Of a stretch of DNA of 64,000 bases, positions 58,867 through 63,815 are shown piece after piece. The stretch lies in the NCBI RefSeq assembly GCF_902713615.1, contig NC_052167.1, positions 3,534,001-3,598,000 of the forward strand, in the 5' to 3' direction. The stretch comes from Scyliorhinus canicula (Eukaryota). Below the pieces are notes generated by a model, which made no database searches, was not told the origin of the DNA, and saw nothing but the letters and a program-made list of their open reading frames with translations. A program made the translations under genes and the position numbers. Position 1 is the stretch's first letter, and each line of letters opens with the position of its first letter.

Positions 58867-59042
58867 GAGACATTGCGGATGGAGCAGCTGCAAGAGTCGA
58901 CAGCCAACCTGGACCTACAGCAGGTTTCCAGCGTCTGCCCAATCAACCTCCTCCAGCAAAGGAATGTCCCACGGGTAGAACCAGCTGCAGCACCTGAGCC
59001 GGGCCTGAGCACTCACCTCCGCAAATTGAACTGCTGCTCGGA
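58867..59042 (+). CDS. SEC24A/B-like exon at the start of the folded core
   Basis: Acceptor cccgacag and donor GA|gtaag. Translates ETLRMEQLQESTANLDLQQVSSVCPINLLQQRNVPRVEPAAAPEPGLSTHLRKLNCCS, resembling the SEC24A/B VNLLQERN...KLNC.P segment. Confidence 0.85.
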
Positions 59043-62000
59043 GTAAGAACTGGGGGTTCAGTGTGTACAATACAGTAACATCTAGATTCTAGAAAAAGAC
59101 AGACATGCATTAATCGAGCGCCTTTCAGAACCTCAGGACCTCCCAGAATGCATCACAGACAAGTATTTTCTTTTTTAAGTGCGGTTATTTCTATAACGTA
59201 GGAAAGGTAGGCATCAGGTTGCGCGCATCAAGGCCTTACAAATGGCAATGGGGTAATGACCTGAACGTCTGATTTTATTGATCATGGTCAAGAGGTATAT
59301 ATTGGCTGGGGTACATGTTAGAACTCCTTCTGTTCTTCTGAGGGCAAGCAGAGACTTGGCTTAACACCTCACCCTTAGCCTGGACACATCTACAACACCA
59401 TGTCCTGATAGAATCATAGAACCATAGAAAGGTTACTACTCAGAAGGTGGCCATTCAGCCCATCTTGTCCATGCCAGCACCAGGACATTCAGGTGCCCTT
59501 TCTAAGCCCACCTTCCTGCACCCGGTCCGTAGCCTGTAACTTACAGCACTTAAGGTGCGGATCCAGGTCCCTTTTGTTTCCCTCGTGCACTGATGTCAAG
59601 TCCCTGCCTGAGGTGGACTAGTTGATTTCCACCAGGTTTAAGGGGCTTTAGCTATCAGGACAAACAGAGAACTTCCTTGGGAAGTTTGTGGAGTGTGTCC
59701 ACCTGTACTTGTGAGCAGTACAAGCAGTAATTACTCACTGTCAGATGCCCTGGGCTATATGTTTTGGTCCTGTCCAAAGCTGGAGGATTACTGAAAGGAG
59801 GTTTTTAGGGTAATTTCTAAAGTGGTGCACGGGAAACTGGACCCGGGCCCCTGGGGGGCCATATTCGGGGTGTCGGACCAGCCGGGGTTGGAAACGGGTG
59901 CGGAGGAAGATTTGTAGCCTTCGCCTCGTTGATCGCCCGGAGGCGGATCCTGATAGGTTGGAGAGCAGCCTCTCCACCCTGTGCCCTGGCGTGGCGGGGG
60001 GACCTGTTGGAATTCTTGACTCTTGAGAAGGTTAAGTTTGAACTGAGGGGAAGGATGGAGGGGTTCTACAATTCATGGGCATTATTCATTATACACTTTC
60101 AAGAACTGGATAACATCGAACATTAGTTGGGGCGTGTGGATGGGAGGATTGGGGGGAGGGGGGCGGTTTGGGTTAATGGCGACTATGGGTAATCCCTGAT
60201 TCCTTTTTGTCATTTGTTTATGTGACCATGCGGGCTAATGTCTGGGGTTTGGTGGGAGGATGGGATTGTTGTTATTGATATGGGAATTGGCATATTTGTT
60301 ACTAATTATTGTTTATTGTTGGTGGGTGTAAATTTGGGAGAAAATGTGAAAAAGGAGAATAAAAAATATATTAAAAAAAAATATGGCGCAGAGACCTTCA
60401 ACCTCATGAGGTAACAACGAGGATCGCGACTACCCTGTTGCCCACCTCGACAATAATCAGCTCATGGATGCATATTTAATAAGATGAACAGCACACAATC
60501 ACACTTGGTCAGCCATCCCACCCTCCCAAATGAGCAGCTATCACTCCCACTTTTGTGCCCACCACCAAAGCTAGTCTCCAGGATGGCAGATCCCTGCTAT
60601 AGAGTCACATAACAGCAGTCAGTAACTCATTGTGTGTGAATACTGCGGAACATTTTTTTTTTTTTTTGGTTTTCTCATATTTATAAACTGTACTGCGGAA
60701 CATTTTTGAGAGAGCCAACAAAGTGCAAATCATTCTGTTATATATCTATATGGGGAATTGTGAGCTAATAAGGGCCTGGACGCATGCATTTCTGAAAGAC
60801 AGGCTGTACTTTTTTCGGGCAGCACGGTAGCATGGTGGTTAGCATAAATGCTTTACAGCTCCAGGGTCCCAGGTTCGATTCCCGGCTGGGTCACTGTCTG
60901 TGTGGAGTCTGCACGTCCTCCCCGTGTGTGCGTGGGTTTCCTCCGGGTGCTCCGGTTTCCTCCCATAGTCCAAAGATGTGCGGGTTAGGTGGATTGGCCA
61001 TGCTAAATTGCCCGTAGTGTCCTAAAAAGTAAGGTTGGGGGGGGGTTGTTGGGTTACGGGTATAGGGTGGATACGTGGGTTTGAGTAGGGTGATCATGGC
61101 TCGGCACAACATTGAGGGCCGAAGGGCCTGTTCTGTGCTGTACTGTTCTATGTTCTATATCGCATCTATGTATAGAAGAGTGTTTGGATAGCTACAGTTG
61201 GTCCTATCGGTTCTGAATGAGGGAGGGGAATGATGGGCATGGTAGCTGCCAGCGTCCGCTGCCTAGTCGTATCCCCTGCAGAATGTGTGTCGGTGGACTA
61301 CAGGGAGCGAACACTCCCTGTACCCTCGATCCTAGTTCGATAGCCTTTCCAATTCACAGCTGGCATGTGTGATCCAGATAGAGATGGGCAGTGAACTTGC
61401 ACAGTGCTGGTGGGGGTCGAGGTATTTTCTGTGTGTCCAACTCACAAGGCGACAGTGGGTGTGATAATTGTTGTGTATTTTTGTTTTCTTCCTTAGTGTG
61501 TTTCAGTGCACACTGGTGAACATTCCACACACTCTGGCAATGCTGAAGCAGGTGAAACTTCCTCTCGGTCTTATCTTCCAACCCTTCAAGGATTCCAGGG
61601 TAGGTCGACTGGAATGGGATGAGCATTCACCCATGCTGCTTGGATCCTTAACTTTTATTGTGCCTTATTTTCTGAATCAATTGACATTTTAAAGACAGGG
61701 TCATAGATATTATTTTCAATAAGAGGATCAGAGAGTGTGGCAGAAATTGACCAGACTATGGCGCAGAACAGCCAGGATCTAACAAAATGGCAGAGGAAGC
61801 TCAAAGGTTCCATACCTGCATCTATGTTTCTGATATTACGGGCTCATCTACGTTGCCCCCCATGTGTCCCTTCTCAAAAGTGGTAACATCCTTCTGATGA
61901 TTGGATGACCAGAACTTCCCACTGTAGTGACCAACTTTCATCTTCCTTAGATTCCCCAAGCAGTCCCAGAGCTATTGCTCTGCTTGTCCGTAAGGAGCCA

Positions 62001-63815
62001 TAGCTTGCAAGGGACCTTCAGGCAACTCTCTCTGTTTAGAGAGAGAGAGAGAGAGAGAGAGAGAAACGTGGTAATAGCTTGAGAGGCACAACTCTGTATC
62101 AAGAATCACTCCCACTCTTACCACCTGCCCTTGGCATAATGGGAGGGCTAGCAGTTTGCTTGGCAACCTCTTTGGATGAGCCATGAACGCCCTCCTTTCC
62201 ATGGCCAAGTGGCCCTGGAGTGGGACTTGAACCAGGTCAGAAGGGAAAAACAGTTCAAAATTGCCAAAGGTCAGTACTACTGGAGTTCCATTTTCAGGTT
62301 ACTGTGTTTTTTCCCTTCTAGATCAGCTGGGGCGGCAGGGCGGCACAGTGGTTAGCACTGCTGCCTACGACGCTGAGGACCTGGGTTCGATCCCGGCCCC
62401 GGATCACTGCCCGTGTGGAGTTTTCACATTCTCCCCATTTCAACGTGGGTCTCACCCCCACAACCCAAAGATGTGCAGGGTAGGTGGATTGGTCACACAA
62501 AATTGCCCCTTAATTAGAAAAAAATAATTGGGCATTCTAAATTTTTTTTACAAAGGAATAAAATCTTCTGGATCAGAGGCAGAGGTGCTGGAACCTGAAT
62601 CACCTGATCTTGCGATTGCCCCACTGTGAATAATTGATCGTTCCTGATGGAACATCCTGCATCTTTGCAAATCCATCTTCCAAAAGACCGCTGAGGTGCG
62701 GTTACATTAGTGTTGCCATTTCTGTAGGTGTCATCACATGACTTTCTCCCTTCCCGTGCCCCACCCCCACACGCCCGCCATTGGTCACTTGACACATTCA
62801 CAGTTGCGCCACCCTGCCTTCCCTACAGCCAATGGGAAAACGGGATGGCTCTTCACTCCTCACTACCTGATTGAATAATTCCTGCCTCTCAGTAAAACTA
62901 TATTTATTCCCCCTAAGTCTGATACTTTTATAATAACAATCAGCAAAAGCCTTCAAAGAATTCTTTATTTCCAAGCAGTTTTTTTTATTGTCACCTTCGT
63001 TTTTGTTCCTCCCGTCTCTGGTCATCATAGTTTGGAAGGCTGAGAAGTGATCTTCGTACAATGTCGAAGTTACTGAGGGGACGCTGTTGCTCGTTATGCT
63101 CAAATGGCCTCCTTCTGCACTGTAGGGATTCTATATCTATGTTTATCTCAGCAGTTCTGACAGCATCTGGACAGAGAGAAAGGAGCTAATGTTTCGAGTC
63201 TGGAAGACTCTTTGTCAAAGTCATCCAGTCTCGAAACGTTAGCTCCCTTTTCTCTCCACAGATGCTGTCAGACCTGCTGAGAATAACCAGTATTTTCTGT
63301 TTTAGTTTCAGATTCCAGCATCTGCAGTAATTTGCTTTATACATACCAGTCTTTGGAAACCCCTCCCCCAGAGACCAGTGGAGGCTGGGTTATTGAATAT
63401 AGTCAAGATTAAATTCGATAGATTTTTGATTTACAATTCAGGGAGTCAGGGGTTATGGGGACAAGGAAGAAAGTGGCGTTAAGGCCACAATCGGATTGGC
63501 TGCGACCTTATTGAAAGGCGAACCGGCCTACTTCTGCTCAATTTCTTGCGATCTTATGCTGACAGGAGGTTAGTCTTTCAATCCTGGAGAGCTGATGAAC
63601 TTAAGCTAAATTAAGGAGCAGTGATAAGGCCACGTTATTCAGAATAAATAGCAAAATGTTGATAACATGTTGCCTGCTGGTATTCCAGGAGCCTCCCCTG
63701 CTGATCACTGATGTGCCCCCTCGCTGTACAACGTGTCAGACCTACATCAACCCCTTCATCACCTTCATTGACCAACAACACTGGAAATGCAATGCTTGTT
63801 TCTCGCTCAATGACG
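58867..63815 (+). CDS. SEC24A/B-like COPII cargo adaptor, partial (continues past the window end); join(58867..59042, 61497..61599, 63689..63815...)
   Basis: Three in-phase exons (176/103/127 nt) with canonical splice sites encode INLLQQRNV...LRKLNCCSD-VFQCTLVNIPHTLAMLKQVKLPLGLIFQPFKDSR-EPPLL...RCTTCQTYINPFITFIDQQHWKCNACFSLND. This is the Sec23/24 zinc finger with the A/B-subfamily TYINPF motif. Confidence 0.9.
59745..60381 (+). mobile_element. L1-clade LINE 3' end with A-rich tail
   Basis: LIARRRILIGWR...LEFLTLEKVKF...FYNSW C-terminus, G/T-rich 3' UTR, then AATAAA and poly(A). Confidence 0.7.
60817..61157 (+). mobile_element. HE1-like V-SINE with CR1-type 3' tail (representative; others at ~7485-7826, 9125-9465, 12582-12913, 23597-23943, 36865-37216, 41747-42098, 58246-58576)
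   Basis: tRNA head, V-domain core GGGTTTCCTCCGGGTGCTCCGGTTTCCTCCCA, and tail GGGCCGAAGGGCCTG...(TTCTATG) matching the CR1 end at 47090-47140. Confidence 0.9.
61497..61599 (+). CDS. SEC24A/B-like exon (FQCTLVNIP...KLPLGLIFQPFKD)
   Basis: Long polypyrimidine acceptor ttttcttccttag and donor AGG|gtaggt. Resembles the FRCTLT.IPQTQALLNKAKLPLGLLLHPF segment of SEC24A/B. Confidence 0.9.
63145..63335. mobile_element. Penelope-like element end, present as an inverted pair (related pieces at 26690-26770 and 50608-50700)
   Basis: CTCAGCAG.TCTGACAGCATCTG...TTTCGAGTCTGG is followed by its reverse complement CCAG.CTCGAAACGTTAGCTCC...CAGATGCTGTCAGACCTGCTGAG. The family assignment is an inference. Confidence 0.55.
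63689..63815 (+). CDS. SEC24A/B-like zinc-finger exon
   Basis: Acceptor ttccag, CxxC...CxxC intact, donor G|gtaag. Confidence 0.92.

What the first reader, a model, noticed from the sequence alone, without database searches (positions are those of the whole stretch)
58867..63815. Divergent SEC24A/B-type gene opposite SAR1A: possible third, unnamed SEC24A/B ohnolog
Seen: three intact, in-phase exons encode the start of a Sec24 core with a complete CxxC/CxxC zinc finger and the A/B-type TYINPF motif, transcribed away from SAR1A. Known (from memory): in human, SAR1B sits head-to-head with SEC24A, whereas the TYSND1-SAR1A locus is followed by PPA1 with no SEC24A/B gene. SEC24A and SEC24B are nearly identical across this zinc finger, while this exon matches recalled SEC24B at only about half of its 42 positions, without gaps. 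Inference: an ancestral SAR1-SEC24 pair was duplicated in the vertebrate genome duplications, and this shark kept the SAR1A-linked copy. That copy would be a fast-evolving extra COPII cargo adaptor, potentially with its own cargo specificity.
Basis: partly seen in the sequence, partly recalled or inferred. Interest (0 to 1): 0.85.

Follow-up and report, generated by a model that had tools for sequence, protein, structure and literature searches.

The report
Fifth SEC24 gene beside shark SAR1A
This shark carries an expressed, fast-evolving extra member of the SEC24A/B family of secretory-vesicle cargo adaptors, sitting head-to-head with SAR1A; the same gene exists in all cartilaginous fishes searched and in the coelacanth, and no copy was found in other vertebrates.

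Summary
The three exons (58867-59042, 61497-61599, 63689-63815, + strand) are in phase and have canonical splice sites. They belong to a gene whose ATG exon (48211) and second exon (57831-57943) also lie in the window. RNA contigs from three studies join exon 4 to exon 5 exactly.

The 193 encoded residues are 95% identical to a Scyliorhinus torazame "Sec24B-like" protein of 829 aa. That protein belongs to a clade I call X:
- It holds 13 cartilaginous-fish species (sharks, rays, chimaera) plus the coelacanth.
- It is about 50% identical to SEC24A and SEC24B, which are 75% identical to each other.
- It is sister to gnathostome A+B (100/95). Joining X to A or to B is weakly rejected (AU p about 0.02).

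X lies head-to-head with a SAR1 gene in this window, in chimaera and in skate. Bird SEC24A-SAR1 and amphioxus Sec24-SAR1 are arranged the same way. Here the SAR1 gene sits next to TYSND1, so it is SAR1A.

X keeps all five Sec24 domains and the B-site arginines. It has lost about 80% of the N-terminal tail and 4-7 positive charges around the zinc finger.

A canonical shark SEC24A could not be retrieved. Verdict: a real, ancient third A/B-class paralogue, found in no paper searched.

The parts
48211..48271 (+). X gene, first coding exon (ATG at 48211; 20 codons + 1 base), donor gtaagt
   Evidence: tblastn: 20/20 identical to S. torazame P0160 residues 1-20; sequence and donor site. The 5' UTR is at least 239 nt, judged from the X10 contig; its position was not mapped.
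57831..57943 (+). X gene, coding exon 2 (113 nt), part of the short N-terminal tail
   Evidence: tblastn to P0159, P0160 and P0165; AG acceptor and GT donor, phase fits.
58867..59042 (+). X gene, coding exon 3 (176 nt): end of the tail and start of the Sec24 core (INLLQQ... NCCS)
   Evidence: 90% identical to P0160 in the tblastn alignment.
61497..61599 (+). X gene, coding exon 4 (103 nt): the strand that leads into the zinc finger (VFQCTLVNIP...KLPLGLIFQPFKDSR)
   Evidence: RNA contigs of runs X5, X6 and X10 start their match at 61497 and splice from 61598/9 to 63688/9.
63689..63815 (+). X gene, coding exon 5 (127 nt): Sec23/Sec24 zinc finger with four cysteines and TYINPF. The gene continues beyond the window end.
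   Evidence: 88% identical to P0001 and 52% to canonical SEC24A/B. The RNA junction and the exon end at 63815 are seen in three runs.
20510..30524 (-). SAR1A gene, six coding exons (198 aa): 30524-30465, 28900-28784, 27892-27830, 26337-26236, 25367-25236, 20620-20513 plus stop (peptide-match limits; the exact splice boundaries lie 0-3 nt beyond them). Divergent from X; the two ATGs are 17.7 kb apart.
   Evidence: Motif scans and exon coordinates. Called SAR1A because TYSND1 lies next to it.
3297..11523 (-). TYSND1 (peroxisomal leader peptide-processing protease): large first exon ORF 10297-11523 and a later exon ORF 3297-3752
   Evidence: ORFs; Atlas nearest clusters named 'peroxisomal leader peptide-processing protease', score 0.97; Pfam Trypsin_2 in both ORFs.
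31530..34644 (.). G-rich 16-bp minisatellite (about 190 copies, GC about 0.86) in the SAR1A-X intergenic region; not part of either coding sequence

Best explanation
The window holds the first five coding exons of an intact, transcribed gene for a fifth vertebrate SEC24 protein. I call it X. It is a third member of the SEC24A/B class.

Origin: X arose when an ancestral head-to-head SAR1-SEC24 gene pair was duplicated. This happened after the split from amphioxus and before cartilaginous and bony vertebrates separated, most likely in the vertebrate genome duplications. The SAR1B-linked copy became SEC24A. The SAR1A-linked copy is X. X survives in sharks, rays, chimaeras and the coelacanth, and was found nowhere else.

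Inferred function: X is a COPII inner-coat cargo adaptor that pairs with SEC23 and is recruited by SAR1-GTP.
- It keeps the five Sec24 domains, the zinc-binding cysteines, and the carboxylate-binding B-site residues (equivalents of human SEC24A Arg750, Arg752, Tyr496).
- It has lost about 80% of the disordered N-terminal tail.
- It has lost 4-7 positive charges around the zinc finger, and it carries substitutions next to the B site.
Its membrane contact or cargo selectivity is therefore probably altered.

Shown: gene structure, splicing, clade, linkage, residue pattern. Inferred: the duplication mechanism, COPII function, changed cargo specificity.
For: Gene and expression:
- Five in-phase exons with canonical splice sites give 193 aa, 95.3% identical to S. 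torazame P0160.
- The exon 4-5 junction is present in RNA contigs of three studies. One contig of 2760 nt is long enough for a whole mRNA.

A distinct clade:
- A single best hit at 88%, everything else about 50%.
- Orthologues in 13 cartilaginous-fish species at 59-92% identity to P0001, then a drop to 47%.
- A search with a profile of the clade scores X proteins at 1331-1724 bits, the coelacanth at 1114, and the canonical plateau at 1056 or below, with no other lineage in between.

Tree:
- X is monophyletic (100/100), the coelacanth is sister to the cartilaginous-fish X, and X is sister to A+B (100/95).
- AU tests: X+A p=0.024, X+B p=0.022, coelacanth X placed inside A p=3e-63.
- At 19 columns that are invariant in 18 canonical sequences and invariant but different in six cartilaginous-fish X, the coelacanth shares the X state at 12 and the canonical state at 2.
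- Canonical SEC24B exists separately in a sawshark and a skate.

Linkage:
- SAR1(-)/X(+) in chimaera L001 and skate L002 and in this window.
- SAR1(-)/SEC24A(+)/Get2-like gene in a bird.
- SAR1(-)/Sec24(+) in amphioxus.
- TYSND1 lies beside this window's SAR1.

Protein features:
- All five Pfam domains.
- PDB SEC24B and SEC24A cores match at E 1e-255 to 1e-250, against 1e-102 for SEC24C and 1e-91 for SEC24D.
- B-site residues are as defined in PMC5464768. In X, Arg750, Arg752 and Tyr496 are kept in nearly all members.
- The N-terminal tail is 66-129 aa, mostly 66-82 (10 in the chimaera model), against 340 aa in A and 400-460 aa in B.
- The zinc-finger segment has net charge +7 in all 20 canonical sequences from scallop to bird, and 0 to +3 in X. 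Complete residue switches are enriched there, 8 of 37 invariant columns against 10 of 140 elsewhere, Fisher p=0.027.
- X evolves faster than SEC24B but is constrained: shark-skate core identity is 75.7% against 89.9% for SEC24B, and 46.5% of core columns are invariant across nine cartilaginous-fish X.
Against: - No canonical SEC24A of a cartilaginous fish or of the coelacanth was retrieved, because hit lists stop at the best 120. Three A/B-class genes in one genome is therefore not directly shown.
- The stem of X is very long (0.79-1.0 substitutions per site). Its position outside A+B could be long-branch attraction, and the AU rejections are only marginal (p about 0.02).
- The coelacanth branch is long (0.92), its gene model is split in two and lacks the Arg752 equivalent, and its linkage to SAR1A could not be checked.
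- The lamprey and hagfish positions are weakly supported (88/33), so timing relative to cyclostomes is open.
- No shared CpG-island promoter is visible: the ATGs are 17.7 kb apart and the only strongly CpG-rich stretch between them is the minisatellite.
- The rest of this gene lies beyond the window.
- Run X21, of which about a third was read, showed no reads on the exons.
Confidence: 0.8

Rival explanations
1. X is simply the fast-evolving SEC24A orthologue of cartilaginous fishes and the coelacanth. These lineages would then have only two A/B-class genes, and the tree position outside A+B would be a long-branch artefact.
For: No canonical cartilaginous-fish or coelacanth SEC24A appeared in any hit list. 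NCBI names several members 'Sec24A-like', and names one coelacanth fragment 'Sec24A'. The stem branch is very long, and the AU rejection of X+A is only p=0.024.
Against: - SEC24A of sturgeon, paddlefish, arowana, a bat, birds and lizards forms a clade (100/99) that excludes the coelacanth X. If X and A were orthologues, this would contradict the species tree.
- Holding the coelacanth X with A costs 148 log-likelihood units.
- The coelacanth and cartilaginous-fish X share 12 of 19 derived states at otherwise invariant columns.
- X sits beside the TYSND1-linked SAR1 and a gene like hnRNP D or hnRNP A/B. It does not sit beside the CAMLG-type gene that flanks bird SEC24A.
Confidence: 0.06
2. X is an ancient paralogue, but it arose by a local or segmental duplication of the SAR1-SEC24 pair, not by whole-genome duplication. 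Alternatively it is the true sister of only A or only B.
For: The tools showed only pair-level linkage, not a wider paralogous block. The topology (X,(A,B)) fits 2R, but it also fits an older segmental copy. The AU tests leave X+A and X+B only weakly rejected. The cyclostome positions are poorly supported.
Against: Two neighbouring genes were copied together at least twice (SAR1A-X and SAR1B-SEC24A), after amphioxus and before the gnathostome crown. That is the signature and the time window of 2R. From memory, human SAR1A and SEC24C (10q22), SAR1B and SEC24A (5q31), and SEC24B and SEC24D (4q25-26) lie in one known paralogy group. X's downstream neighbour resembles hnRNP D and hnRNP A/B, whose human relatives lie on 4q21 and 5q35.
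Confidence: 0.12
3. In this shark the gene is a transcribed relic without a function in the COPII coat: a decaying copy, or one used for something else.
For: Many residues that are invariant from scallop to bird are changed: only 104 of 178 are kept in all X. The N-terminal tail is largely gone. No reads fell on the exons in the part of run X21 that was read. Downstream exons were not seen in this window.
Against: Full-length open reading frames with all five domains exist in 13 species that together span the whole crown group of cartilaginous fishes. 46.5% of core columns are invariant among them. The internal tree follows the species tree. Splicing is exact and there are no mismatches in three RNA data sets. 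The zinc cysteines and B-site arginines are kept.
Confidence: 0.02

Closest known systems
SEC24A (human 5q31.1, head-to-head with SAR1B)
   Same: Same five-domain Sec24 core. A/B-type zinc finger with TYINPF. Equivalents of the B-site residues Arg750, Arg752 and Tyr496 are present. The same divergent arrangement with a SAR1 gene, shown here in a bird. The PDB SEC24A core aligns over its whole length at E about 1e-251.
   Different: Only about 50% core identity, whereas A and B are 75% identical to each other. Lies outside the A clade. Its partner is the TYSND1-linked SAR1A, and its downstream neighbour resembles hnRNP D and hnRNP A/B rather than CAMLG. The tail is about 70 aa instead of 340. 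The zinc-finger segment has net charge 0 to +3 instead of +7.
SEC24B (human 4q25)
   Same: Best PDB match (3EH1, E 4e-255). A/B-class motifs. NCBI names many members 'Sec24B-like'.
   Different: Sharks and skates have a separate canonical SEC24B that groups with SEC24B of bony vertebrates (100/99). X+B is rejected at p=0.022. X is 49% identical to shark SEC24B. The tail is far shorter (about 70 aa against 400-460 aa).
SEC24C / SEC24D
   Same: Same protein family and domain order. From memory, human SEC24C lies on the same chromosome arm as SAR1A.
   Different: Much more distant: PDB E 1e-102 and 1e-91 against 1e-255. C and D have Asp at the Leu773 position and use the IxM site (PMC5464768). 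X has Met or Leu at that position.
Pdx2: a gene kept in cartilaginous fishes and coelacanths and lost elsewhere (PMC2944030)
   Same: The same pattern of retention: an ancient vertebrate paralogue present in cartilaginous fishes and the coelacanth, missing from tetrapods and ray-finned fishes (for the paper; for X).
   Different: An unrelated gene family. It serves only as a precedent for the pattern of loss.

Membership tests
Sec24 family (COPII inner-coat cargo adaptor) | Sec23/Sec24 zinc finger with four cysteines | tested here: met
   Window exon 5 has C-x2-C-x18-C-x2-C. Pfam PF04810 hits the orthologue P0160 at E 7.5e-13.
Sec24 family (COPII inner-coat cargo adaptor) | Trunk, beta-sandwich, helical and gelsolin domains after the zinc finger | tested here: met
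   All four are found in P0160, which is 95% identical to the window over the shared 193 aa, and in the coelacanth P0279. For this window's own gene these exons lie beyond 64000 and were not seen. A 2760-nt RNA contig suggests they exist.
Sec24 family (COPII inner-coat cargo adaptor) | Binds SEC23 and enters COPII coats; selects cargo | not testable with these tools
   No biochemical data. Inferred from the full-length alignment to the crystallised SEC24A and SEC24B cores.
SEC24A/B class (as opposed to C/D) | Closer to A/B than to C/D; TYINPF-type zinc finger; B site able to take LxxLE/DxE signals (Leu773, not Asp) | tested here: met
   PDB E 1e-255 to 1e-250 for B and A, against 1e-102 and 1e-91 for C and D. 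The Arg750, Arg752 and Tyr496 equivalents are kept. Position 773 is Met in most X and Leu in the chimaera, never Asp. Neighbouring changes (R769Q, D772Q or D772E, M497Q) leave the actual specificity open.
SEC24A orthologue | Groups inside the SEC24A clade | tested here: not met
   X is outside A+B (100/95). AU for X+A is p=0.024. The coelacanth X placed within A gives p=3e-63.
SEC24A orthologue | Lies head-to-head with SAR1B, with CAMLG downstream | tested here: not met
   The bird SEC24A locus has SAR1 upstream and a Get2-like (CAMLG-type) gene downstream. X has the TYSND1-linked SAR1 upstream. In chimaera, skate and S. torazame its downstream gene has two RRM domains and a CBFNT domain.
SEC24B orthologue | Groups inside the SEC24B clade and is the lineage's only such gene | tested here: not met
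   Sawshark and skate canonical SEC24B (P0274, P0233) sit inside B (100/99), apart from X. AU for X+B is p=0.022.
Ohnologue from the vertebrate genome duplications | Duplication after the amphioxus split and before the gnathostome crown | tested here: met
   Amphioxus roots outside all vertebrate copies. X contains both cartilaginous fishes and a bony vertebrate, the coelacanth. Timing relative to lampreys is unresolved (88/33).
Ohnologue from the vertebrate genome duplications | Copies lie in paralogous chromosome blocks | tested here: inconclusive
   Pair-level paralogy is shown: SAR1-X, SAR1-SEC24A, and the ancestral amphioxus SAR1-Sec24 pair. The wider block (human 4q/5q/10q) rests on memory only.
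Third A/B-class gene in one genome | The same genome also has canonical SEC24A and SEC24B | tested here: inconclusive
   Canonical SEC24B was found in two other cartilaginous fishes and in the coelacanth. Canonical SEC24A was not retrieved for any of them, because hit lists are capped at 120 rows. This genome itself could not be searched.

The most novel reading that the evidence does not exclude
X is a neofunctionalised fifth vertebrate SEC24 (in effect a 'SEC24E') that was present in the ancestor of jawed vertebrates. Its stripped N-terminal tail, de-charged zinc-finger face and remodelled B-site surroundings would give it a cargo set or a membrane behaviour that no mammalian SEC24 has. Tetrapods and ray-finned fishes would have lost that adaptor independently.
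Probability: 0.35. Interest if true: 0.7.

Novelty: new member of a known kind. Interest (0 to 1): 0.58.

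Why it matters
A recent review of mammalian COPII counts four SEC24 paralogues, in an A/B pair and a C/D pair (PMC9797344). This locus shows that the ancestor of jawed vertebrates had at least three A/B-class genes.

It also shows that the SAR1-SEC24 head-to-head pair is older than vertebrates and was copied as a unit. 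That explains why SAR1B and SEC24A are neighbours in birds and, from memory, in humans.

X is a natural experiment in adaptor design. It has an intact core and intact carboxylate-binding arginines, yet it lacks the long disordered tail and has lost a charge pattern that is otherwise frozen from scallop to bird. Comparing it with SEC24A and SEC24B could show what the tail and the basic zinc-finger face do.

The gene also adds to the short list of ancient paralogues kept only by cartilaginous fishes and coelacanths.

Tried and rejected
Only exons 4-5 could then be laid, so the junctions of exons 1-3 and the 5' UTR were not checked with RNA.
- The search of earlier findings, by place and by the words SEC24, SAR1B and COPII: nothing.
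- Literature searches found no description of this gene: SEC24 + ohnolog; sec24a + shark; SAR1A/B paralogues; Sec24 + coelacanth / cartilaginous fish.
- Canonical SEC24A of a cartilaginous fish:
  - It was absent from the best 120 rows of all three homologue searches.
  - I tested on SEC24B whether a sturgeon N-terminal query would rank sharks high. It ranks them last, so I dropped that idea.
  - A-type exon fragments from the representative search carry no names.
  - The Logan protein P0328 is a SEC24A of a sarcopterygian that is not an amniote, not of a shark.
- The look-up of encoding contigs had no record for lizard SEC24A, skate SEC24B, the two coelacanth X models or gar SEC24B. Coelacanth linkage and the SEC24B neighbourhood were therefore not tested.
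- The lamprey loci show no SAR1 within 10 kb upstream.
- Yeast Arg230 and Arg235: these are Miller 2003 cargo-site mutants, cited in PMC4831881. My mapping of them onto the arginines flanking the first zinc-finger cysteines rests on remembered yeast numbering. I could not verify it with the PDB tool, so I offer it only as a lead.
- A shared bidirectional CpG-island promoter was looked for and not found.
- dN/dS was not computed. The only CDS pairs available (chimaera, skate, window) are too distant to be informative.

Full report
**1. The observation**

Each is bounded by an AG acceptor and a GT donor, and their phases fit. The third exon carries the four zinc-finger cysteines and TYINPF.

- an ATG exon at 48211-48271;
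- exon 2 at 57831-57943.

The five exons splice into 193 residues.

Logan contigs from three RNA runs of three different studies join 61598/9 to 63688/9 with GT..AG ends and no mismatches. They start and stop their matches exactly at the exon ends. One of these contigs is 2760 nt, long enough for the whole mRNA. The gene is therefore real, spliced as predicted, and expressed.

**2. The surroundings**

- On the - strand lies a six-exon, 198-aa SAR1 gene. Its CDS runs from 30524 down to 20510.
- Beyond it, also on the - strand, is a gene whose large first-exon ORF (10297-11523) is nearest to clusters named 'peroxisomal leader peptide-processing protease', which is TYSND1. It has Trypsin_2 domains.
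- The order TYSND1-SAR1 matches my memory of the human SAR1A locus at 10q22.1, so this SAR1 is SAR1A.
- The new gene points away from SAR1A. The two ATGs are 17.7 kb apart.
- The gap holds a 3.1-kb G-rich minisatellite, LINE fragments and SINEs. It has no evident shared CpG island.

**3. What the gene is**

An exhaustive search with the 42-residue zinc-finger exon gave one hit at 88% identity: Chiloscyllium plagiosum 'Sec24A-like'. Everything else was near 50%.

Searching with that protein found orthologues in sharks, rays and the chimaera at 59-92% identity. Identity then fell sharply to 47% for canonical SEC24A and SEC24B of all vertebrates. The genera were Cetorhinus, Scyliorhinus, Pristiophorus, Heptranchias, Heterodontus, Hemiscyllium, two Chiloscyllium species, Narcine, Mobula, Leucoraja, Pristis and Callorhinchus.

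The window's 193 residues are 95.3% identical to the S. torazame protein of 829 aa. I call this clade X.

Classifying the other representative hits turned up a coelacanth protein (XP_014340472.2 / H3B6C9) that is closer to X than to A or B.

A search with a profile of the X clade gave these scores:

| Group | Bits |
|---|---|
| Cartilaginous-fish X | 1331-1724 |
| Coelacanth | 1114 |
| Canonical plateau | 1056 and below |

No other lineage falls in between. Within this database, X is confined to cartilaginous fishes and the coelacanth.

**4. Phylogeny**

The tree has 42 sequences and 893 columns, built with LG+C20+F+G4:
- X is monophyletic (100/100).
- The coelacanth is sister to all cartilaginous-fish X.
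- Inside X the branching follows the species tree: chimaera, then rays, then sharks.
- X is sister to a clade of gnathostome SEC24A plus SEC24B (100/95).
- Canonical SEC24B of a sawshark and a skate lies inside SEC24B.
- SEC24A of sturgeon, paddlefish, arowana, a bat, birds and lizards forms its own clade.

AU tests:

| Constraint | p |
|---|---|
| X held with A | 0.024 |
| X held with B | 0.022 |
| Coelacanth X placed inside A | 3e-63 |

The stem of X is very long (0.79-1.0), so attraction towards the outgroups is a concern. An argument that does not depend on the tree is shared derived residues. I took 19 columns that are invariant in 18 canonical sequences and invariant but different in six cartilaginous-fish X. 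At these the coelacanth has the X state at 12 and the canonical state at 2. This makes an independent acceleration of SEC24A in the two lineages very unlikely. It places the origin of X before the split of cartilaginous and bony vertebrates.

**5. Linkage**

| Lineage | Arrangement |
|---|---|
| Chimaera, skate | 198-aa SAR1 head-to-head with X; downstream a gene with two RRM domains and a CBFNT domain, like hnRNP D or hnRNP A/B (also downstream in S. torazame) |
| Bird | SAR1 head-to-head with SEC24A; downstream a Get2-like (CAMLG-type) gene |
| Amphioxus | a true SAR1 head-to-head with the single Sec24A/B-type gene, about 4 kb away |

The divergent SAR1-SEC24 pair is therefore older than vertebrates and was copied as a unit. 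SAR1B-SEC24A and SAR1A-X are two of the copies.

This fits the vertebrate genome duplications, but pair-level evidence cannot exclude an early segmental duplication. The lamprey loci show no SAR1 within 10 kb, and the cyclostome positions in the tree are weak.

**6. How it probably works**

What X keeps:
- All five Sec24 domains.
- A full-length alignment to the crystallised human cores: SEC24B at E 4e-255 and SEC24A at about 1e-251, against 1e-102 for SEC24C and 1e-91 for SEC24D.
- The B-site residues. The B site of human SEC24A is defined by Arg750, Arg752 and Tyr496, with Leu773 deciding LxxLE/DxE use (PMC5464768). X keeps both arginines, except Lys750 in Mobula and Ser752 in the coelacanth. 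It keeps Tyr496, except His in the chimaera. At position 773 it has Met or Leu (Thr in Heptranchias, Lys in Mobula, Gln in the coelacanth), never the Asp of SEC24C/D.

What X has changed:
- Residues next to the B site: R769Q, D772Q (D772E in the chimaera) and M497Q.
- Of 178 columns invariant in 20 canonical sequences from scallop to bird, only 104 are kept in all nine X. In 18 columns no X keeps the canonical residue.
- These complete switches are enriched in the zinc-finger module: 8 of 37 invariant columns there, against 10 of 140 elsewhere (Fisher p=0.027).
- That segment has net charge +7 in every canonical sequence and 0 to +3 in X.
- The lost residues include two arginines beside the first zinc-finger cysteine pair (Arg432 and Arg435 in SEC24A numbering). 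From my memory of yeast numbering, two arginines flanking that pair (Arg430, which most X keep, and Arg435, which all cartilaginous-fish X have lost) correspond to yeast Arg230 and Arg235, mutated as cargo-site residues by Miller et al. 2003 (cited in PMC4831881). I could not verify this mapping.
- The disordered N-terminal tail is mostly 66-82 aa, against 340 in A and 400-460 in B.

Rate and constraint:
- X evolves roughly 2.5-3 times faster than SEC24B in the same lineages. Shark-skate core identity is 75.7% against 89.9%.
- It is still clearly constrained: 46.5% of core columns are invariant across nine species from chimaera to sharks.

My reading is that X is a working COPII adaptor that still binds carboxylate-type export signals, but with altered membrane contact or cargo choice. 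Everything about function here is inferred, not shown.

**7. What remains open**

- I could not retrieve a canonical SEC24A from any cartilaginous fish or from the coelacanth. Hit lists stop at 120 rows, and thousands of tetrapod and teleost sequences score equally. 'Three A/B-class genes in one genome' is therefore not directly demonstrated.
- This genome outside the window could not be searched.
- The coelacanth's linkage could not be looked up.
- The downstream exons of this copy lie beyond the window.

**8. Novelty**

NCBI's pipeline already lists these genes as 'Sec24A-like' or 'Sec24B-like', so the sequences are public. The review I read counts four SEC24 paralogues in mammals (PMC9797344). 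None of five literature searches found any description of a fifth, cartilaginous-fish and coelacanth paralogue.

The retention pattern has a precedent in Pdx2 (PMC2944030).

I rate this a new member of a known kind, of moderate to good interest.

Noticed in passing
window 31530-34644: A 3.1-kb G-rich minisatellite lies about 1 kb upstream of the SAR1A ATG exon, between SAR1A and X. The unit is about 16 bp (GGGGGGAAGGGCGCGG), with about 190 copies, GC about 0.86 and a strong G skew on the + strand. Because G is on the + strand, it would form G-quadruplexes on the X-sense strand.
   Followed up: partly
window 11600-12350: A long, near-perfect tandem repeat lies immediately upstream of the TYSND1 first exon. 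It is visible as ORFs with a periodic 8-residue motif in several frames. It was not analysed with the tandem-repeat tool.
   Followed up: no
window 45577-47046 (+): ORFs like a LINE reverse transcriptase lie in the SAR1A-X intergenic region. The C-terminus of the Heterodontus 'Sec24A-like' model P0166 (1122 aa) matches this element (46618-46713). That public model probably includes transposon sequence and a spurious N-terminus.
   Followed up: partly
window 58240-58560, 60820-61140, 62330-62520, 63860-64000: SINE copies that look tRNA-derived sit inside the X introns. The copy laid (62330-62520), together with a separate inverted-repeat element at 63040-63360, shows very high word depth in the RNA runs (10^3 to 10^5). 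This shows that the repeat families are abundantly transcribed genome-wide.
   Followed up: no
L001 27816-33841; L002 55441-59956; S. torazame locus: Downstream of X in chimaera, skate and catshark is a gene of 359-370 aa. In skate and catshark it has a CBFNT domain and two RRM domains, like hnRNP D or hnRNP A/B; no Pfam hit is on record for the chimaera gene. From memory, the human relatives lie on 4q21 and 5q35. It could be another paralogue kept in this block.
   Followed up: no
L003 1-5953: Amphioxus has two SAR1-type genes in tandem (191 and 192 aa) upstream of its Sec24A/B-type gene. Only the nearer one was checked by motifs.
   Followed up: partly
P0066 / P0276 / P0279 (Latimeria chalumnae): The coelacanth X is annotated as two adjacent gene models (642 aa and 136 aa). 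It has a very long branch (0.92) and has Ser in place of the Arg752 equivalent. It may be decaying, or only poorly assembled.
   Followed up: partly
P0001, P0162-P0165: Several public X isoforms lack part of the beta-sandwich or the gelsolin domain. Examples are Chiloscyllium plagiosum X4 (728 aa) and S. torazame X3 (798 aa). They could be alternative splicing or model errors.
   Followed up: no
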